DNA of 64,000 bases, taken from contig OZ251230.1 in assembly GCA_965240325.2 (NCBI GenBank), positions 2,418,001-2,482,000 on the forward strand. Direction: 5' to 3'. This document shows, piece after piece, positions 13,215 to 40,612 of the stretch. Under the pieces are notes generated by a model. That model ran no database searches and was not told where the DNA came from. It saw nothing but the letters and a program-made list of their open reading frames with translations. Made by a program: the position numbers and the translations under genes. Position 1 is the stretch's first letter. The number at the start of each line of letters is the position of its first letter. The DNA comes from Rebecca billardiae RCC1528. Taxonomy: Eukaryota > Protista > Haptophyta.

Positions 13215-13608
13215 CGCCCGAACGATGACAGCAGAGGCAGTCTGGAGCTGACCGTCGCGCCACAGAGTCGACACGTGAGATGCCGTGATGGGCCTGTTGC
13301 GTGTGCACCGACAGACAGACGAGGACTCGCTACTGCTACCAACGGCGACCGAGTTCAGAGTGGGGAGAATCGGCTCTGCTGATCATGAGCTCCCGCGGGA
13401 AAGTTCAGCAAAGTTCCACACCACGAGCAGGGTTCGGCTTATTTTTCGGGACCCTCCCGCCCTCGGCGGCGACACGCGCGGCGGAGGACTCGGCGACGAG
13501 AGCGCGTCTTCGTGCGCGCGTGGCTGCGGCGGCCGGCTGCACGCGCGCGCGCCATCTCCCCGCTTGAGCACGCGTCCTCCACGCCCACCCAGCCGCGCGG
13601 GACCCGCC

Positions 13609-16600
13609 ATGCCGCCGCCATCGACGTCGGCGGCGCCGCGGTCGCGCTTTGCCCGTACTCACTTTGACCTCGCGAGTGCGACGAGCTTGTCGGCGCCGGC
13701 GTCGATGATCGCCTCGCCGGTCGAGAAGTCGCCGCCGCCGCCGGCGGAGGGCGGGGGCGCCGCATCGCCCGTCCCCCGACCCGTCCCGCGCAAGATCCGG
13801 CAGCAGCTCAGGGACATGAAGGACCTCGCGATCCCGAGCGCCATCGGGACCGACGGCGTGCCTCGCAAGCTCAGGCACGACTCGGGCCGGATCGAGTCGC
13901 CGACGCCGAGCGGCACGGGCGGTGCGGCGCCTCGCGAGCTGCGCGAGCACGGCTCGGCCCGGCGCGTCTCGGACCCGCTCCCCGCCAAGCCCCGAGAGCT
14001 GCGGCAGCACGACTCGATGCGCGAGGGACTCACGCTGGCCGGGCTCAGCCCGCCTCGGCCTCCGCCTGCGCTGCCGCTGCCGGCGGCGCCAGAGGCGGCC
14101 GTGGCGGCGCCCGCGGCGGCGGCGTCGCCGCCCTCGCACTCGCCGCGCTCGCCGCGCTCGCCGGCCGCGCCCCGCACGCCCGAGCCGAGGCTGCCGCCGC
14201 CGCGCGCGCGGCCGTGGCCGCATCAGCAGCTGCCCGAAGCCGGCCCGGCGAGCGGCGGCGGCGCGGCGCGCGGCGCGCGGCCGCGTCCGCTGCTGCGCTC
14301 GCCCTCGCAGCTGGTCGCGGCGGTGAGCGTGACGCGCTTCGTCAACCCGCTGATGCTCACGCTCGCGCTCGCGACGGCGTTCATGGGCGTCGTCAGCTGC
14401 GACGCCGGCCGCGTCCTCCTCGCGTCTGTGGACATCGCGCTGCGCTGGCAGCTCGCCACGCTGGGCGCGGTCGACGGCGCGGCGCTGGGCTGGCGGCGCG
14501 GCGTGCAGAAGGCGGCGCGCGGCGTGCTGACGGCGGCGATCGGCGTGCCCATCGCGATCGCGACGGGCGGCGACCCGCTCGCGCACCTCGATGTGTACGT
14601 GCGCGCGGCCGGGCACGCGCCGTTTCCGTTTGGGGACGGGCTCGCCGTCCCAGACTACGATCTCGTGAGCGAGATTGTGATGGGCGCGGAGCAGCCGCGC
14701 CGGCCGACGGTGCTGGCGCACCCGCTGCTGGTCGGGGACCCGATGCCGCGCGCGTGCATGCGGCGGGACACGCTCATCTTCCTGCCGTCCGGGCACGAGC
14801 ACACGGCCATCCGGACCCTTGTCCACGCGGCCGTCCCCGGCTTCAGCTGGCCCGCGGCCGAGCCGCCGCCTCTCGAGCTGCCTCGCGAGGGCATGCTGCC
14901 TTCGGCGCGGCCGTCGGCGCGGGCGGGGCCGGGCGCCGACGCGGGGGCGGCGCCGACGGCCGAGCCGCCGAGCGCGGGCGCCGAGCCGCCCCCGACGAAC
15001 GCGAGCGCGGTACGCGAGGCTGTTCTGTACAATCTGTTCCGGCGCATGACCGGCGCGCGGCCAGACGTTCGCACCGCCGCGGCGATGGCGGCTTACTACG
15101 AGCACCTGCCGCTGTGCATGCTCGGGCTGCGCGGCGCGGAGACGGTCGAGGCGCGCGCGACCGTCGCGGCGGGCGTGCTCCGCTCGCCGAGCGGCGCGCG
15201 CCTCGCCGAGCTCTGCGAGGTGCACGGCTGCGACGTCCCGGCACTCGCCCAGCAGCTTGCAGACGGTTTATTGTTTGCGGGCGGGTACGGCACGACCCAC
15301 CTGGCGCTGCACACGCTCGAGCGCATCCGCTCCGACCCGGCGCGGTACGTGCCGCAGTGGGCGAGCGCGCCGCGCGAGTTCCTCCTCGAGTCCGCGCGGC
15401 TCGACCCGCCCGTGCTCAGCGTCACGGCACTCGCCCCCGCGGCCGGTCTGTCCGTGCGCTCGGGCGCGCGCGGCGGCGGCGCGCCGATCGAGCTGGCTCC
15501 CGGCGTGCCGATCACGCTGCTGCTCTCGCACGCCAACCGCGACGGCGGCGCGTTCCACCGGCCGGCGGCGTTCGAGCCTCGGCGGCGCGAGCTCGCCAAG
15601 GTCCTCTCGTGGAACGGGCTCGAGGGCGCGGTGCGCGCGGGCACGGCGCCGCGCGGCTGCCCCGGGTACGAGTTGTCGCTCGAGATTGCTCGCCAGATTA
15701 TAAACGCGTCGCTGCCCGAGCCGGACTCGGCCGGAGTGGCGCCGCTCGAGGGCGGCGGCGCGTGGCAGCTGCGCGCGGAGGCGGCGCGCGAGGGCCGCGG
15801 CGCGTCCTCGCGCGCGCAGCGCGGCGCCGCCGCCCCGCGCTTCCAGGACTCCCGCCAGTTCGCGCACACGTACATCGCCTGGGGCCTCGGCTGCCTGGTA
15901 AGCGGCACGCTTCTTCCGGTCGTGGTCCGGCGGCTGGACGGGCCGGCGACGACGTCGGTGATGATGTTCAGCAACACGCAGCAGGGGAACGTGCTCGGCT
16001 GGCTCGCGCTGACGCAGCGGCTCAAGGTCGCCGACCTCTACCTGCCCGGCGAGTCCGGCCTCGTCCGGCTCAAGAACTGGATCGGGCTGTTGCATTACAC
16101 GGCCAACGTCGTGTCGGCTTACACTTGGATCCGGCTGTGGGTGACGCTCAAGTACCAGGGGCGGCGCGCGGAGGGCCTGGCCGAGTCGGCGGCGGCGCTG
16201 CGCGCGTGCGCGCTCATCGCGCTGCTCCCGCCCGCGCTGTACGCCGCGCTCGGCGACGAGTACCCGCGGCGCTGCCTCTCCGCCATCGCACTCTCCGCGT
16301 ACATTCCTGCCGGTGTGCTTGCTGTCGTCGGCTCGGTGGTGTTCTGGCGCGACCACGGCAGGCGACACATCGTGCTGGCGGCGGGGCTGCTCTCGTGGGT
16401 GGGGATCGTGCAGATGGCGCTCGAGGCGCTCGACTTCCCGGACGTGCTCGCGCTCGTCGTGCACGCCATCCACGCGCTGGCCGGCGGCACGCCCGCGCCC
16501 GGCGCCGAGCTCGATTTTGACGAAGCCCTCGAGGGCCTGGCGGCGCGTGCGCCGCTGCGCGCGGCCGCGGTGAGCGCGCTGAGCTCGGCGTTTCCGCTCG

Positions 16601-19493
16601 TGCTACTCGCGCTGCTGTGGTGCTCCGCGCTGGTGATGGACGGGCAGCTGACGGAGGACGTGGCGTACCCGACGCCGCGGCAGATGCGCAGGGTCGCCGC
16701 CGTCAAGTCCGCCCTCCCGTTTGTGTGCGTCGCGCTTGTGCTGTGCGTGCACCGAGCGCTGGTCCCCGCGCTCGCGAGTGACATCACGGGCTGCGCGCGC
16801 GACGCGCGGCTCCTCGGGGAGCACGCGGCGCGGTGCGAGGCGGTGCTGCACGATGGCGGCGCGGCTGCGCTCGATGGGCTGCGCTCGGCGCTCGACGCCG
16901 CCACGCCGAGCCCGGCCAACGCGACGGCGCTCGGCGCCGACGACGAGGGCGGCGCGGCCGGCGCCGAGGCCGCCGCAGCCGCCGCCTCCGGCGCGCAGCG
17001 GGACGCGCCGCCCGCGCAGCAGCAGCAGCCACGCAGCGGCTCGGAGGCTTCGGCGGAGGCGGCGGCGGAGGCGGTGGACGTGGCGGCGGCGGAGGCGGTG
17101 GACGTGGCCGAGGCGGCGGCGCAGGCGCAGGCGCTCGCGGCGGAGCTGCACGCCGCCGCGATGAGCACGGCGGCTCCAGCGATCGCCGAGCTCCCTCAGG
17201 CCGAGCTGCCATCACAGCCTCCGGCTGTGAACGGCAGCGCGCCGCCCGACGACGCGCGCGCGTGCGCCCACGACCCGACCGCCGCGCTCGACTCGCACAC
17301 GCGCCTCTTCTACGTTCTGATCCGGATGCTGGACGACGGCGCCGCGCCAGACGCCTCAATGGTGGGCGTGCCGCGCGACCGCGCCGCCCATCCCGGCGGC
17401 GGCGGCGGCGCGGCGGCGGCGGCGGCGGCGGCTGGCGGCAGCGCGGCGGCGACACCCGCCGCCGCGGCGGCTGCGGCGGCGCGCGGCGCGCCGCCCACGC
17501 CCATGCTCTCGCGCGAGGTCTTCCGCGCGGAGGGCGGGCGGAGCCTATGGGTGCCAACTTTTGACGAGGACGAGTCGCTCGACACGACGTCCTCATTGGC
17601 CAATGAGCTGTTCGACCGTTACGCCATGTCCGCGACGTTTCACCCGCTCGTGGACTCGGAGGTGCCGTGGGCGCCGCCCTCGCCGGCGGCGGCGGCGCCG
17701 GTGGTGGGCGGCGCGGCCGTGGTGGGCGGCACGGCGGCGGGAGCGCCGAGCGAGGCGGCGGCGACGAGCGCGGCGACCTCCAGCGCGGCGGCCATCATGG
17801 ATCGGCTGCATGACAGGCTGCGCGCGCTGCCCACGCCGCTGTACAACTACTCGCACGCGCTGCACGCCGAGCTGCGACGGCCGCGGCGCGTGGGGGCGCG
17901 CCGCCGCCGCCCGTGCAACGGCGGCGGCGCCGCCGCCTGCCGCCCGGCGGCTGGCGGCGGCGCCGAGGGCGCGCCGCCGGCTGGCGCGCCGCCGCCGCCG
18001 GCCGAACCGCCGCGGTTTCAGCCCCTGCTGGCCGACGAGGCGCTCGCGCACATGGCGTTCGGCGGGCTCGGCGCGCACCTGGCGCGCCGCGCGCGCACGC
18101 CCGCCGAGGCCGCCGCCTCCGCCGCCGCGCTCCTCGCCTCCGGCGCGCGCGCGTGCGTGCCCGGACGCATCCCGGAAACTTCCGCGTTCGAGCTCGACCT
18201 CTCGTGGATGGGCGCTCTCACGGTGAGGCCTCCGTTCGAGCGCTACGGCGCCGTCGCCTTCTTCGACGCGCGGCAGCGGGTGCTGGCGATCTGGTGGTGC
18301 CACGGCGCCGCGCTCGTGTACCCGGGTGCGCGCCCCCGCCGCGCTTCGCGCCCGCCGCGCCGCACGCGCGGCGCCGCGCCGCCGCGCCGGCCGGGCGCCG
18401 GTGACACCGCGCGCCGCCGCGCCGCGCGCCCGCCGCCGCGCGCGCCCGCGCGTGCGCAGGCGACCGTCGATGGGCGCACGCCAAGTGGGCGCTTCGCTCG
18501 AGCCTGCTCTCCGGCGTCACGCTGCGCGACCACCTCGCCGCGACGCACCTCGTCATCGCCAACGCGCTCGCCACCGCCTCGCGGGCGCAGCTCGGCAGCG
18601 CACACCCGGTCCGCCGGCTGCTGAAGCCGTTCACGTATCGAACTATCGCTGTCAACCGCGCGTCGCGCAACCTGCTGACGCAGGAGCTGTCTCTGCTGCA
18701 CCGCACAGTGGCGCTGGACGAGCGCGGGCTGCACGCGGCGTTCAACGCGTCGTTCGAGACCACCCGCGCCGGCTTCGCGCCGCTCTCCGACGGCGTCCTC
18801 TTCTCGGCCGAGCCGCCGCTCGACGCGGGCGAGGCACGCACACCGTTTGCGCACGACCTGAGGCGCTACCGGGCGGTCGTGCGCCGGCTGGTGGACGGCT
18901 ACGTGCGCGAGTACTATGCGGACGACGCGGCGGTGCTGGCGGACGTGCCGCTCGGCGCGTTCTGGGCGACGCTGCGCGCCTTCTTCGCCTCCATCCCGCC
19001 GCTGCCTCCCGCCGAGCCGCCGGCCGCGCCCGCGCCGCCCAGTCACGGCGGCGCGCGCCGGTGGTGGCGCTCGCGCGGCGCGGCCCATGAGCCGGACGGC
19101 GGCGCGCGCGAGATGGTGTGCCGCGCGCTGACGTCGTTCATCGTGCACGTCACCGCGGTGCACAAGCAGGTCGGCGCCGCGGGCGAGTACGTCGCCGACC
19201 CGCGCGTCGCGGGCGGCAAGATCCGGCCGGGCTCGGAGCTGGCGGACGTGCAGGCGGCCGTGCAAGTGCTGTCGATCGCGCTAGTCACGAGCTTCAAGCA
19301 GCCGATGCTGCTGGACGACTTCACGCACCTGCTGCTGCGCGACGCGCACTTTGGCCGCACGCGCCGCCTCTTCGACGAGTTCCAGCGCGAGCTCGTCGCG
19401 CTGGCCGACGCGGTCGAGCGGCGCAACGCGCGCAGGCGCTTCAAGCTGAACGCGTTCAACCCGCGCCGCCTCGCGTGCTCAGTCTCGATCTGA
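13609..19493 (+). CDS. CYP74-like cytochrome P450 - multi-pass membrane domain - lipoxygenase fusion; join(13609..18325,18460..19493), ~1916 aa
   Basis: P450: HTAIR C-helix, FAGGYGTT I-helix, ESAR (ExxR), ANRD..AF..P..FEPRR, and SWNG-x10-PRGCPG heme Cys at 15658. Hydrophobic helices at ~15870-16780. LOX after the GT-AG intron: HLAATH (18531), HPVRRLLKPF, TAVHKQVG (19161), C-terminal SVSI-stop. Confidence 0.82.
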
Positions 19494-40412: not shown

Positions 40413-40612
40413 NNNNNNNNNNNNNNNNNNNNNNNNNNNNNNNNNNNNNNNNNNNNNNNNNNNNNNNNNNNNNNNNNNNNNNNNNNNNNNNNNNNNNNNN
40501 NNNNNNNNNNNNNNNNNNNNNNNNNNNNNNNNNNNNNNNNNNNNNNNNNNNNNNNNNNNNNNNNNNNNNNNNNNNNNNNNNNNNNNNNNNNNNNNNNNNN
40601 NNNNNNNNNNNN
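40413..40612. other. Assembly gap (200 N)
   Basis: Run of N. Confidence 1.

What the first reader, a model, noticed from the sequence alone, without database searches (positions are those of the whole stretch)
15255..15670. P450 domain has CYP74-type hallmarks (heme-loop insertion, no I-helix acid)
Seen: the heme motif is LSWNG-LEGAVRAGTA-PRGC, about 10 residues longer than canonical FxxGxRxC. This resembles the plant CYP74 WSNG-x9-NKQC insertion. The I-helix reads FAGGYGTT, with no Asp/Glu before Thr. Established: these features mark O2/NADPH-independent hydroperoxide-rearranging P450s. It lacks the plant CYP74 I-helix Asn, so the product class (AOS, HPL or EAS) cannot be predicted.
Basis: partly seen in the sequence, partly recalled or inferred. 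Interest (0 to 1): 0.75.

Follow-up and report, generated by a model that had tools for sequence, protein, structure and literature searches.

The report
Orphan P450 domain fused to lipoxygenase
The motifs are real and belong to a very divergent, unannotated cytochrome P450 domain joined to a lipoxygenase in haptophyte and dinoflagellate algae; it probably rearranges the lipoxygenase's fatty-acid hydroperoxides without a reductase, but membership of the plant CYP74 group is not shown.

Summary
Observation confirmed. In frame +2 of 15255-15670 the ORF reads FAGGYGTT (15274-15297), ESARLDPPV (15388-15414), LSWNG (15604-15618) and PRGCPG (15649-15666; Cys 15658-15660).

- **Real coding sequence:** homologues reach E 3.5e-77, and at least 231 clusters at 50% identity share these motifs.
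- **P450 fold:** a 66-sequence profile hits solved P450s (E 5e-15). An AlphaFold model (pLDDT 88) aligns to P450s at Z 26-28.
- **Unannotated:** Pfam's p450 model never reaches its threshold, so databases call these proteins only "lipoxygenase".
- **I-helix:** no acid in 64 of 66 members.
- **Heme loop:** the canonical Phe at Cys-7 is absent, and an invariant W-N-G lies 8-34 (mode 16) residues before the Cys.
- **Lipoxygenase link:** 35 of 151 representatives, including this gene, carry a lipoxygenase downstream.

CYP74 membership is not supported.

- The catalytic I-helix Asn is missing.
- The best profile matches are bacterial-type P450s, and structure scores tie.
- A profile of the heme loop alone finds no P450.
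- Ordinary P450s (CypX, BcmD) have equally long loops.
- The fold ends at the L helix.

Best reading: a new LOX-coupled heme-thiolate family, functionally analogous to CYP74. A phylogeny could not be run, and no activity was tested. The scan's sister note on this fusion (s1-341008) is on the same DNA.

The parts
14482..15732 (+). P450-fold domain (ORF residues about 400-816; domain numbering 1-417), ending with the L helix
   Evidence: Profile against PDB: E 5e-15 to P450s. AlphaFold pLDDT 88.4, pTM 0.88. VIA Z 26-28 over 331-365 residues. Homologues at E 3.5e-77.
14800..14814 (+). C-helix HxxxR motif (HTAIR), the bacterial-type counterpart of WxxxR that binds a heme propionate
   Evidence: H107 is invariant in the 4-sequence alignment and R111 is at least 90% conserved in the 66-sequence alignment. 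It aligns to PDHTRLR of CYP107B1 and CYP164A2.
14842..15000 (+). Pro/Ala-rich low-complexity insert inside the domain, specific to this copy (a surface loop or an unrecognised in-frame intron)
   Evidence: It is a gap in the homologues. Model pLDDT is 58-73 there, with no secondary structure.
15274..15297 (+). I-helix oxygen-activation site, FAGGYGTT. There is no Asp/Glu and no CYP74-type Asn.
   Evidence: The family consensus is F-A-G-h-h-G-T-T/S, with D/E in only 2 of 66 members. HMMER aligns AG-l-l-G-t to AGHETT of CYP164A2.
15388..15414 (+). K-helix ExxR followed by DPPV (the 'PPV domain')
   Evidence: E303 and R306 are invariant and V311 is at least 90% conserved. It aligns to EETMRYDPPV of CYP164A2.
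15526..15585 (+). SHANRD...FEPRR: meander with the PERF-type arginine (third member of the ERR triad)
   Evidence: A351, N352, F364 and R368 are at least 90% conserved and D354 is invariant. It aligns to ANRDP..FDPxR of bacterial P450s.
15604..15618 (+). LSWNG motif, the family signature upstream of the Cys pocket
   Evidence: W377 and N378 are at least 90% conserved. SWNG or TWNG occurs in 76 of 109 sequences.
15619..15648 (+). Variable-length loop between W-N-G and A-P-R-x-C (10 residues here)
   Evidence: The W to Cys distance ranges from 8 to 34, with modes at 16 and 19. No residue is conserved at Cys-5 to Cys-10 and there is no Phe at Cys-7. The model puts a short helix at 381-386.
15649..15666 (+). 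PRGCPG: Cys pocket with the proximal thiolate ligand (Cys codon 15658-15660)
   Evidence: Cys 109/109, Arg at Cys-2 107/109, Pro at Cys-3 95/109, CPG 96/109.
15667..15711 (+). L helix, the last conserved element of the domain
   Evidence: Model helix 396-410. Stand-alone relatives end 27-47 residues after the Cys.
15871..16749 (+). Poorly conserved multi-pass hydrophobic linker between the P450 domain and the lipoxygenase
   Evidence: Hydropathy peaks. Alignment shows no conserved His, so it is not a b561-type heme domain.
18326..18459 (+). 134-nt GT..AG intron that joins frame 0 (..VYPG) to frame 2 (DRRWAHAKW..)
   Evidence: DNA read and three-frame translation. The spliced junction matches VYPGDADW and VSRGDPDW of the homologues.
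18235..19493 (+). Lipoxygenase catalytic region (context for the function). WAHAKW at 18471-18488, DHLAATHL (HxxxxH) at 18528-18551, C-terminal ..ACSVSI at 19473-19490, stop codon at 19491-19493.
   Evidence: PDB phmmer: 12S-LOX E 2.5e-9, and also the coral AOS-LOX. Pfam Lipoxygenase E 0.005 here and 9e-12 in P0003.

Best explanation
Window 14482-15732 encodes the heme-thiolate domain of a previously unannotated, very divergent P450 family. In this gene the domain is followed by a multi-pass membrane linker and a lipoxygenase.

**Shown**
- The domain has the P450 fold.
- It keeps all the heme-binding residues: C-helix HxxxR, ExxR plus the meander Arg, and Arg-x-Cys-Pro-Gly.
- It has lost the parts that a monooxygenase uses. 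The I-helix acid is gone. Depending on register, the acid-alcohol pair is either Tyr-Gly or Gly-Thr.
- The Phe-x-x-Gly half of the heme signature is replaced by an invariant Trp-Asn-Gly plus a loop of variable length.
- The fold stops at the L helix.
- The fusion to a lipoxygenase recurs across haptophytes and dinoflagellates.

**Inferred**
- The lipoxygenase oxygenates a polyunsaturated fatty acid.
- The ferric heme-thiolate then cleaves the O-O bond of that hydroperoxide and rearranges the resulting radical. The product could be an allene oxide, an epoxyalcohol, a divinyl ether or chain-cleavage products.
- This would need no O2, NADPH or reductase. It would work like CYP74, the coral catalase-type AOS-LOX and the fungal DOX-CYP fusions.
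- The product class cannot be predicted.

The family is best treated as its own P450 lineage, analogous to CYP74, and is not shown to be a member of the CYP74 clan.
For: **P450 fold**
- The 66-sequence profile hits CYP107B1 at 5e-15 and CYP164A2 at 9e-15.
- AlphaFold model pLDDT 88.4, pTM 0.88.
- VIA Z 26-28 against P450s.

**Conserved heme ligation**
- Cys 109/109 and Arg at Cys-2 107/109.
- E303 and R306 invariant; R368 at least 90% conserved.

**Loss of monooxygenase features**
- D/E in the I-helix motif in only 2 of 66 members.
- No Phe at Cys-7 in 109 sequences.

**Obligate association with LOX**
- 35 of 151 family representatives have a C-terminal LOX after the domain, with domain identities down to about 24%.
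- The window's LOX hits 12S-LOX at E 2.5e-9, with HxxxxH and a C-terminal Ile.
- No reductase, ferredoxin or b-type heme domain is present in the fusion.

**Likely location away from the reductase**
- Stand-alone members have hydrophobic N-termini and end in xEL, an ER-retention-like signal.
- That would put the domain in the ER lumen, away from the cytosolic P450 reductase. This step is inference.

**Partial CYP74 resemblance**
- An AOS structure is the top Foldseek hit (3dam, E 1.7e-7).
- AtAOS gives the longest VIA alignment (365 residues).
- AtAOS is one of the few P450s that the profile aligns through the heme loop.
Against: - No activity, heme binding or expression was tested, and no RNA run was listed.
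- The nearest solved relatives by profile are ordinary bacterial monooxygenases.
- The Cys pocket keeps the canonical Arg at Cys-2.
- A Thr follows the Gly in the I-helix. In one register that means the 'alcohol' is retained.
- P450s without the acid that still act as monooxygenases exist.
- BcmD, described from memory as an ordinary hydroxylase, has a similar xPRxCPG pocket with a long loop.
- Linker topology is unresolved. The P450 and LOX domains could lie on opposite sides of the membrane, which would weaken simple channelling.
- The catalytic Asn that CYP74 uses for O-O homolysis is absent.
Confidence: 0.58

Rival explanations
1. It is a true, if distant, member of the CYP74 clan. On this reading the W-N-G-loop-Cys arrangement is homologous to the CYP74 nine-residue insertion, and the enzyme is an AOS, HPL or EAS by descent.
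For: - W lies 16 residues before Cys in the window and in 40 of 109 relatives. From my memory of the AtAOS sequence, its WSNG...NKQC has the same spacing.
- The PPV motif and ERR triad are present. Both are listed as CYP74 features in PMC8124189.
- The I-helix acid is absent.
- An AOS structure is the top Foldseek hit and AtAOS gives the longest VIA alignment.
- AtAOS is the best-scoring eukaryotic P450 for the family profile, at 4.9e-11.
Against: - The catalytic I-helix Asn is absent. Ala occupies that position in 57 of 66 members.
- 24 bacterial-type P450s outrank AOS in the profile search.
- VIA Z values are tied.
- Identity to AOS is 15-16%.
- The loop-only profile finds no AOS even at E 10.
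- Loop length varies from 8 to 34, not a fixed nine.
- PPV is also present in CYP164A2.
- The Cys pocket is PRxCPG, of the canonical Arg type.
- The C-helix HxxxR and the FDPxR motif are bacterial-type.
- The fold is truncated after the L helix.
Confidence: 0.15
2. It is an O2-dependent P450 monooxygenase or peroxygenase of bacterial ancestry, served in trans by a redox partner or by H2O2. It would hydroxylate or epoxidise fatty acids or LOX products. The odd motifs would reflect divergence only.
For: - The best profile and NCBIfam matches are bacterial biosynthetic P450s: CYP107B1, CYP164A2, CypX-type, TxtE and BcmD.
- The protein-language-model neighbours are generic bacterial P450s.
- Arg at Cys-2 is canonical, and a Thr is conserved after the Gly.
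- One member, P0112, has a D-T pair.
Against: - The acid is absent in 64 of 66 members.
- No redox domain is present in any of the fusions inspected.
- Stand-alone members look ER-luminal.
- The recurrent fusion is to an enzyme that itself delivers an activated oxygen donor, the hydroperoxide.
Confidence: 0.17
3. The domain is a non-catalytic or regulatory heme or lipid-binding module. It could, for example, anchor, activate or sense for the lipoxygenase, or it could be a decaying relic.
For: - The fold is truncated after the L helix, which removes the SRS-6 region.
- Pfam p450 is never reached.
- A few members have lost the Cys context, for example P0024, P0046 and P0120.
Against: - All heme-ligating residues are strongly conserved across at least 109 sequences at 22-40% identity.
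- Independent stand-alone forms with targeting signals exist.
- The structure prediction is confident.
Confidence: 0.07

Closest known systems
CYP74 family and clan (plant AOS, HPL, DES and EAS; CYP440, CYP443; Methylobacterium CYP74-like)
   Same: - P450 fold with a thiolate Cys.
- No I-helix acid.
- The canonical Phe-x-x-Gly of the heme signature is lost, with extra residues before the Cys.
- PPV motif and ERR triad are present.
- It works downstream of a lipoxygenase.
   Different: - No catalytic I-helix Asn.
- Arg, not Lys, at Cys-2 (the CYP74 residue is from memory).
- Loop length is variable (8-34) and not a fixed nine.
- Bacterial-type HxxxR and FDPxR motifs.
- The fold ends at the L helix.
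- About 15% identity.
- Not closer to AOS than to bacterial P450s by profile or Z-score.
- Covalently fused to the LOX. As far as I know and could find, that is not described for CYP74.
Coral and cyanobacterial catalase-related allene oxide synthase-lipoxygenase fusions (e.g. Plexaura AOS-LOX, PDB 3dy5)
   Same: - One polypeptide carries an N-terminal hemoprotein and a C-terminal LOX.
- The window's LOX region hits this protein's LOX domain.
- The inferred logic is the same: the LOX makes the hydroperoxide and the heme domain rearranges it.
   Different: - The heme domain here is a Cys-ligated P450 fold, not a Tyr-ligated catalase fold.
- A multi-pass membrane linker separates the two domains.
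Fungal dioxygenase-P450 fusions (DOX-CYP: linoleate diol synthases, 9-DOX-AOS, EAS; reviewed in PMC13049297)
   Same: A self-sufficient P450 that needs no reductase is fused to the fatty-acid dioxygenase that supplies its hydroperoxide substrate.
   Different: - The dioxygenase there is a heme peroxidase/COX-like DOX placed N-terminal to the P450.
- Here it is a non-heme-iron LOX placed C-terminal.
- No sequence relationship between the P450 domains was tested.
CYP5164 clan (Ectocarpus EsEAS CYP5164B1, hydroperoxide bicyclases CYP5164A3 and CYP50918A1)
   Same: These are protist P450s that rearrange fatty-acid hydroperoxides. They were first placed in the CYP74 clan and later split off as their own clan (PMC10813956).
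   Different: - They are stand-alone enzymes.
- None of the named members surfaced among the family's hits.
Bacterial biosynthetic P450s with long Cys loops (CypX/CYP134A1 3nc3; BcmD 9xho and 9xhp)
   Same: - Best-aligned solved P450s through the heme loop. BcmD has xPRxCPG after a long loop, and CypX has the same PxR-to-Cys distance of 25.
- The ANRDP..FDPxR meander is shared.
   Different: - These keep a complete P450 fold.
- CypX keeps the FGxGxHxC motif.
- They are redox-partner-dependent oxidases (from memory).
- They have no LOX partner.

Membership tests
Cytochrome P450 superfamily | P450 fold | tested here: met
   AlphaFold pLDDT 88.4, pTM 0.88. VIA Z 26-28, rmsd 3.0-4.2 Å, 311-365 residues aligned to many P450s. 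All 500 top Foldseek hits are at E <= 0.001, and the 50 listed are all P450s.
Cytochrome P450 superfamily | Proximal Cys thiolate in a Cys pocket just before the L helix, with Arg/His at Cys-2 | tested here: met
   Cys393 (15658-15660) is present in 109/109 sequences and Arg at Cys-2 in 107/109. It aligns with the heme Cys of 8fib, CypX and BcmD.
Cytochrome P450 superfamily | ExxR in the K helix plus the meander Arg (ERR triad) | tested here: met
   E303 and R306 are invariant and R368 is at least 90% conserved in 66 sequences.
Cytochrome P450 superfamily | Full heme signature FxxGxRxCxG (Phe at Cys-7) | tested here: not met
   No Phe at Cys-7 in 109 sequences; the position holds E, A, L, Y, K or C. 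Only xPRxCPG is kept.
Cytochrome P450 superfamily | Pfam PF00067 at its gathering score | tested here: not met
   No hit for the window copy at E up to 10. The best relative scores 17.1 bits against a cut-off of 22.8.
Cytochrome P450 superfamily | C-terminal beta-strand region after the L helix (carries SRS-6) | tested here: not met
   Stand-alone members terminate 27-47, mostly 30-33, residues after the Cys. The model has nothing ordered after residue 417. Structural alignments stop at model residues 412-435.
CYP74 family / CYP74 clan | Conserved Asn in the I-helix groove, which starts O-O homolysis (PMC8124189) | tested here: not met
   The window has F-A-G-G-Y-G-T-T. The position after the Phe is Ala in 57 of 66 members and Asn in 2 of 66, and is not Asn in the window. 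The register against CYP74 is inferred, not aligned.
CYP74 family / CYP74 clan | Nine-residue insertion in the heme-binding loop (PMC8124189, PMC10813956) | tested here: inconclusive
   - Extra residues lie between W-N-G and the Cys (W at Cys-16), but the length varies from 8 to 34.
- The PxR-to-Cys distance of 25 equals that of the ordinary P450s 8fib and CypX.
- The loop-only profile finds no AOS.
- No residue-level alignment to a CYP74 could be printed.
CYP74 family / CYP74 clan | No acid-alcohol pair for O2 activation in the I helix | tested here: met
   No D/E in the motif in the window or in 64 of 66 relatives. HMMER register: Y-G opposite E-T of CYP164A2.
CYP74 family / CYP74 clan | PPV domain after ExxR | tested here: met
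   DPPV at 15403-15414, with V311 at least 90% conserved. It is not specific, because CYP164A2 has RYDPPV.
CYP74 family / CYP74 clan | Groups with CYP74-clan sequences in a phylogeny (clan) or shares more than 40% identity (family) | tested here: inconclusive
   - The family criterion fails, at 15-16% identity to AOS structures.
- The clan criterion was not testable, because no CYP74-clan sequences could be fetched.
- Surrogates do not favour it: AtAOS ranks 25th in the profile search and Z-scores are tied.
CYP74 family / CYP74 clan | Turns over fatty-acid hydroperoxides without O2, NADPH or a reductase | not testable with these tools
   This needs the recombinant enzyme. Only indirect support exists: the LOX fusion and the absence of a redox domain.
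Dioxygenase-hemoprotein fusion enzymes of oxylipin synthesis (functional class) | A heme domain and a fatty-acid dioxygenase with intact metal ligands in one polypeptide, conserved across taxa | tested here: met
   - The LOX has WxxAK, HxxxxH and a C-terminal Ile.
- The fusion is seen in 35 of 151 representatives, including E. huxleyi and Symbiodinium.
- One intron at 18326-18459 joins the reading frames.

The most novel reading that the evidence does not exclude
A new P450 clan, independent of CYP74, has evolved reductase-free chemistry on fatty-acid hydroperoxides.
- It has a minimal P450 fold that ends at the L helix.
- It carries a W-N-G / variable-loop / PRxCPG heme site.
- It exists both as ER-luminal stand-alone enzymes and as single-chain P450-membrane-LOX oxylipin synthases in haptophytes and dinoflagellates.

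This would be a third independent dioxygenase-hemoprotein fusion, after the coral/cyanobacterial catalase-LOX and the fungal DOX-CYP fusions.
Probability: 0.45. Interest if true: 0.8.

Novelty: new variant of a known kind. Interest (0 to 1): 0.68.

Why it matters
Haptophytes and dinoflagellates dominate marine phytoplankton and coral symbioses, and their oxylipin enzymes downstream of lipoxygenase are essentially unknown.

This domain is invisible to Pfam. Public records therefore call these proteins only 'lipoxygenase', 'Alox5' or 'hypothetical'.

If the inference holds, three things follow:
- It identifies the missing hydroperoxide-converting step in these algae.
- It gives a single-chain enzyme that can be expressed and assayed directly.
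- It adds a structurally minimal, possibly ER-luminal P450 to the short list of P450s that work without oxygen or a reductase. That bears on how often this chemistry has arisen independently.

Tried and rejected
- **Cytochrome b561 electron-transfer domain in the membrane linker.** Pfam gave a hit at E 0.1. Rejected: no His is conserved in the linker across 13 fusions.
- **Profile of the heme loop alone (A4) against PDB.** This was meant to force a residue-level alignment with AOS. It gave no P450 hit at E up to 10, so the WSNG/SWNG resemblance has no statistical support. I never obtained a printed AOS alignment.
- **Word-indexed protein search with the 66-sequence alignment.** It returned only one Micromonospora P450. 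Candidates were probably swamped by low-complexity words, so it was uninformative.
- **RNA evidence for the gene model.** No run was listed.
- **ESM Atlas by features and by shape.** Only generic bacterial P450 clusters came back.
- **NCBIfam.** Only sub-threshold bacterial P450 subfamilies came back.
- **Literature.** No paper in the held library describes a P450-LOX fusion or a CYP74-clan enzyme in haptophytes or dinoflagellates. Brash 2009 (PMC2783490) is not held.
- **Membrane topology from hydropathy.** The number of linker helices is too uncertain, at 3-9, to say whether the P450 and LOX face the same side.
- **Phylogeny with CYP74-clan members.** Not possible, because no tool here returns those sequences and I did not type sequences from memory.
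Full report
**Setting**

The window is extremely GC-rich: 59-85% in 2-kb bins. It has one 200-N gap at 40413-40612, and long ORFs occur on both strands by chance. The finding lies in ORF 13285-18624 (+), which is 1779 codons. The best named relative is a 'lipoxygenase domain-containing' hypothetical protein of Emiliania huxleyi CCMP1516. It is only 44% identical over the queried part. The source is therefore a haptophyte-like eukaryote, and this is not that exact gene.

**1. The observation**

| Motif | Window coordinates |
|---|---|
| FAGGYGTT | 15274-15297 |
| ESARLDPPV | 15388-15414 |
| FEPRR | 15571-15585 |
| LSWNG | 15604-15618 |
| ten-residue spacer | 15619-15648 |
| PRGCPG (Cys 15658-15660) | 15649-15666 |

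This is real coding sequence.
- The word-indexed search found three 1200-1300-aa relatives, at E 3.5e-77 to 4e-39, all carrying Pfam Lipoxygenase.
- The exhaustive HMMER search of 1.84 billion representatives found 231 proteins at E <= 0.001 and 99 at E <= 1e-10.

The motifs are the conserved core of that family.
- In a 66-sequence alignment, E303, R306 and D354 are invariant.
- R111, G267, V311, A351, N352, F364, R368, W377, N378, R391 and C393 are at least 90% conserved.

**2. Is it a P450?**

Pfam's p450 model does not see the window copy at all, even at E up to 10. It stays below its gathering score in relatives, with a best of 17.1 bits against 22.8.

The fold is nevertheless certain.
- A single-sequence PDB search gave only marginal P450 hits, but they were in correct register (E 0.2-0.3).
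- A 4-sequence profile gave CYP164A2 at 6e-6.
- The 66-sequence profile gave CYP107B1 at 5e-15, CYP164A2 at 9e-15 and 516 hits at E <= 1; 59 of the 60 listed are named P450 or P450-like.
- The AlphaFold model built on that alignment has pLDDT 88.4 and pTM 0.88.
- The model aligns to P450 structures at Z 26-28 over 311-365 residues.

The heme-binding set is complete:
- C-helix HxxxR at 14800-14814
- the ExxR plus meander-Arg triad
- Arg-x-Cys-Pro-Gly, with Cys in 109/109 sequences and Arg at Cys-2 in 107/109

**3. How it departs from ordinary P450s**

(a) *I helix.* The family consensus is F-A-G-h-h-G-T-(T/S). Asp or Glu occurs in only 2 of 66 members (P0023, P0112).
- HMMER aligns A-G-l-l-G-t gaplessly to A-G-H-E-T-T of CYP164A2. 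In that register the acid is Tyr (window) or Leu (family), and the conserved Thr is Gly.
- Either way there is no acid.

(b) *Heme loop.* No sequence has Phe at Cys-7, and positions Cys-5 to Cys-10 are unconserved. An almost invariant (S/T)-W-N-G sits 8-34 residues before the Cys, with modes at 16 (40 sequences, including the window) and 19 (28 sequences). The Phe-x-x-Gly half of the signature has therefore been replaced by an indel-prone loop. The model gives it one helical turn at 381-386.

(c) *C-terminus.* 25 xEL-terminated sequences, from 14 clusters, terminate 27-47 residues after the Cys; most terminate at 30-33. The model has nothing ordered after residue 417. The domain therefore ends with the L helix and lacks the beta-strand region that follows it in the P450s I know. 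This includes CYP74, which from memory has about 45-60 residues after the Cys.

**4. Is the loop a 'CYP74 insertion'?**

The literature held here lists these as typical CYP74 features: the nine-residue insertion in the heme-binding domain, the I-helix groove with a catalytic Asn, the ERR triad and the PPV domain (PMC8124189; PMC10813956).

*In favour*
- The W-to-Cys spacing of 16 matches the AtAOS motif as I remember it.
- PPV and ERR are present.
- The acid is absent.
- Guayule AOS is the top Foldseek hit (E 1.7e-7, TMq 0.56).
- AtAOS gives the longest VIA alignment (365 residues at Z 26.3).
- AtAOS is aligned by the profile through the loop (profile 186-384, E 4.9e-11).

*Against*
- Foldseek E-values for other P450s are within a factor of two, and VIA Z values are tied at 26-28.
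- 24 distinct bacterial-type P450 sequences outrank AOS in the profile search.
- A profile of the loop region alone finds no P450, AOS included, at E up to 10.
- The distance from the PxR arginine to the Cys is 25. That is the same as in the ordinary bacterial P450s 8fib and CypX, whose alignments were printed. BcmD has a still longer loop ending in N-P-R-K-C-P-G.
- PPV also occurs in CYP164A2.
- The position where CYP74 has its Asn is Ala in 57 of 66 members.
- Arg at Cys-2, HxxxR and FDPxR are canonical or bacterial-type features.
- Identity to AOS is 15-16%.

The family-level criterion (>40% identity) fails. The Asn criterion fails. The clan criterion (phylogeny) could not be tested, because no CYP74-clan sequences can be fetched with these tools. 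I therefore do not file the domain under CYP74.

**5. Context that bears on function**

- Downstream of the domain lies a poorly conserved multi-pass hydrophobic linker, roughly 15871-16749. It has no conserved His, so the weak b561 hit is spurious.
- An Ala-rich low-complexity stretch follows.
- Then comes a lipoxygenase. A 134-nt GT..AG intron at 18326-18459 joins ..VYPG in frame 0 to DRRWAHAKW.. in frame 2, and the junction is matched by homologues.
- The LOX has WxxAK and HxxxxH (18528-51) and ends in ..SVSI. It hits 12S-LOX at E 2.5e-9 and also the LOX half of the coral AOS-LOX.
- The fusion is not a one-off. 35 of the 151 representatives carry a LOX after the P450-like domain, with P450-domain identities down to about 24%. 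Members include E. huxleyi and Symbiodinium sp. KB8, where it is annotated 'Alox5'.
- Other members are stand-alone proteins of about 465 aa, found for example in Crypthecodinium cohnii and MMETSP transcriptomes. They have hydrophobic N-termini and xEL C-termini. That suggests soluble ER-luminal enzymes out of reach of the cytosolic P450 reductase. This last point is inference.
- No fusion inspected carries a reductase, ferredoxin or flavodoxin domain.

**6. Mechanism**

*Shown:* a heme-thiolate P450 fold without the O2-activation acid, covalently and recurrently linked to a lipoxygenase.

*Inferred:* the LOX product, a fatty-acid hydroperoxide, is both substrate and oxygen donor. The ferric heme cleaves the O-O bond and the alkoxyl/epoxyallylic radical is rearranged. 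This parallels CYP74, the coral catalase-type AOS-LOX and the fungal DOX-CYP fusions (PMC13049297).

Without the CYP74 Asn or any assay, the product class is open. I put this reading at about 0.58.

| Reading | Confidence |
|---|---|
| LOX-coupled heme-thiolate family acting on hydroperoxides, not shown to be CYP74 | 0.58 |
| True CYP74-clan membership | 0.15 |
| Trans-served monooxygenase or peroxygenase | 0.17 |
| Non-catalytic module | 0.07 |

**7. Novelty**

Searches of the held literature found no description of a P450-LOX fusion, or of a CYP74-type enzyme, in haptophytes or dinoflagellates. Public names for these proteins mention only the lipoxygenase.

The kind of system is known: a hemoprotein that rearranges hydroperoxides, fused to its dioxygenase. 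This heme domain, its truncated fold and this architecture appear to be a new variant.

The scan's own sister note s1-341008 describes the same gene as a CYP74-like P450 - membrane - LOX fusion. I verified the three parts, but not the 'CYP74-like' label.

**Limits**

No expression data, no phylogeny, no residue-level structural superposition and no biochemistry were obtained. Statements about AtAOS residues, BcmD's redox dependence and typical post-Cys lengths rest on my memory and are marked as such.

Noticed in passing
window 18326-18459: A 134-nt, very GC-rich GT..AG intron splits a Gly codon and shifts the gene from frame 0 to frame 2. The tail of the long ORF (18326-18624) is therefore not coding. 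In-frame introns elsewhere in the gene cannot be excluded.
   Followed up: yes
window 13861-14016: Upstream of the P450 domain the ORF has three copies of a P-R-(K/E)-L-R-x-H-(D/G)-S motif, inside a long Pro/Ser/Ala-rich N-terminal extension. Homologues lack this extension. A hydrophobic segment beginning at an internal Met (14353) could be the real signal anchor or start.
   Followed up: partly
P0051, P0055, P0067, P0090, P0123 and others (stand-alone relatives): Dinoflagellate and MMETSP relatives of about 465 aa have signal-peptide-like N-termini. They end 30-47 residues after the heme Cys in xEL (GADL, SGEL, SEEL, KKEL, QHEL), an ER-retention-like signal that is unusual for a P450.
   Followed up: partly
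P0001 (E. huxleyi EMIHUDRAFT_228891), residues about 395-420: The public gene model reads LSWNG and then diverges, lacking the PRxCPG Cys pocket. It also lacks a LOX segment present in the window. This is probably a mis-spliced model, and it helps explain why the P450 part was never annotated.
   Followed up: no
window 17551-17577 and aligned columns in P0001-P0026: A short acidic motif (P..ED-ED, here VPTFDEDES) is conserved in all fusions. A pair of conserved Cys lies just after the last linker helix, between the membrane linker and the lipoxygenase. Its function is unknown.
   Followed up: no
window 15904-17400: A weak Pfam Cytochrom_B561 hit (E 0.1, 13.3 bits) falls in the membrane linker. 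No His is conserved among 13 fusions, so it is taken as spurious.
   Followed up: yes
P0112 (1696 aa) I-helix: One LOX-fused member has F-K-G-L-L-D-T-S, a canonical-looking Asp-Thr pair. This hints at the ancestral monooxygenase state, or at the correct register of the family's G-T.
   Followed up: no
window 19143-19175: The second LOX metal-ligand motif reads VHVTAVHKQVG, with family consensus VT-x-x-H-x-Q-VG. It does not fit the usual H-x3-N/H spacing cleanly, so this LOX subfamily is itself divergent.
   Followed up: no
window 40413-40612: A 200-N assembly gap.
   Followed up: no
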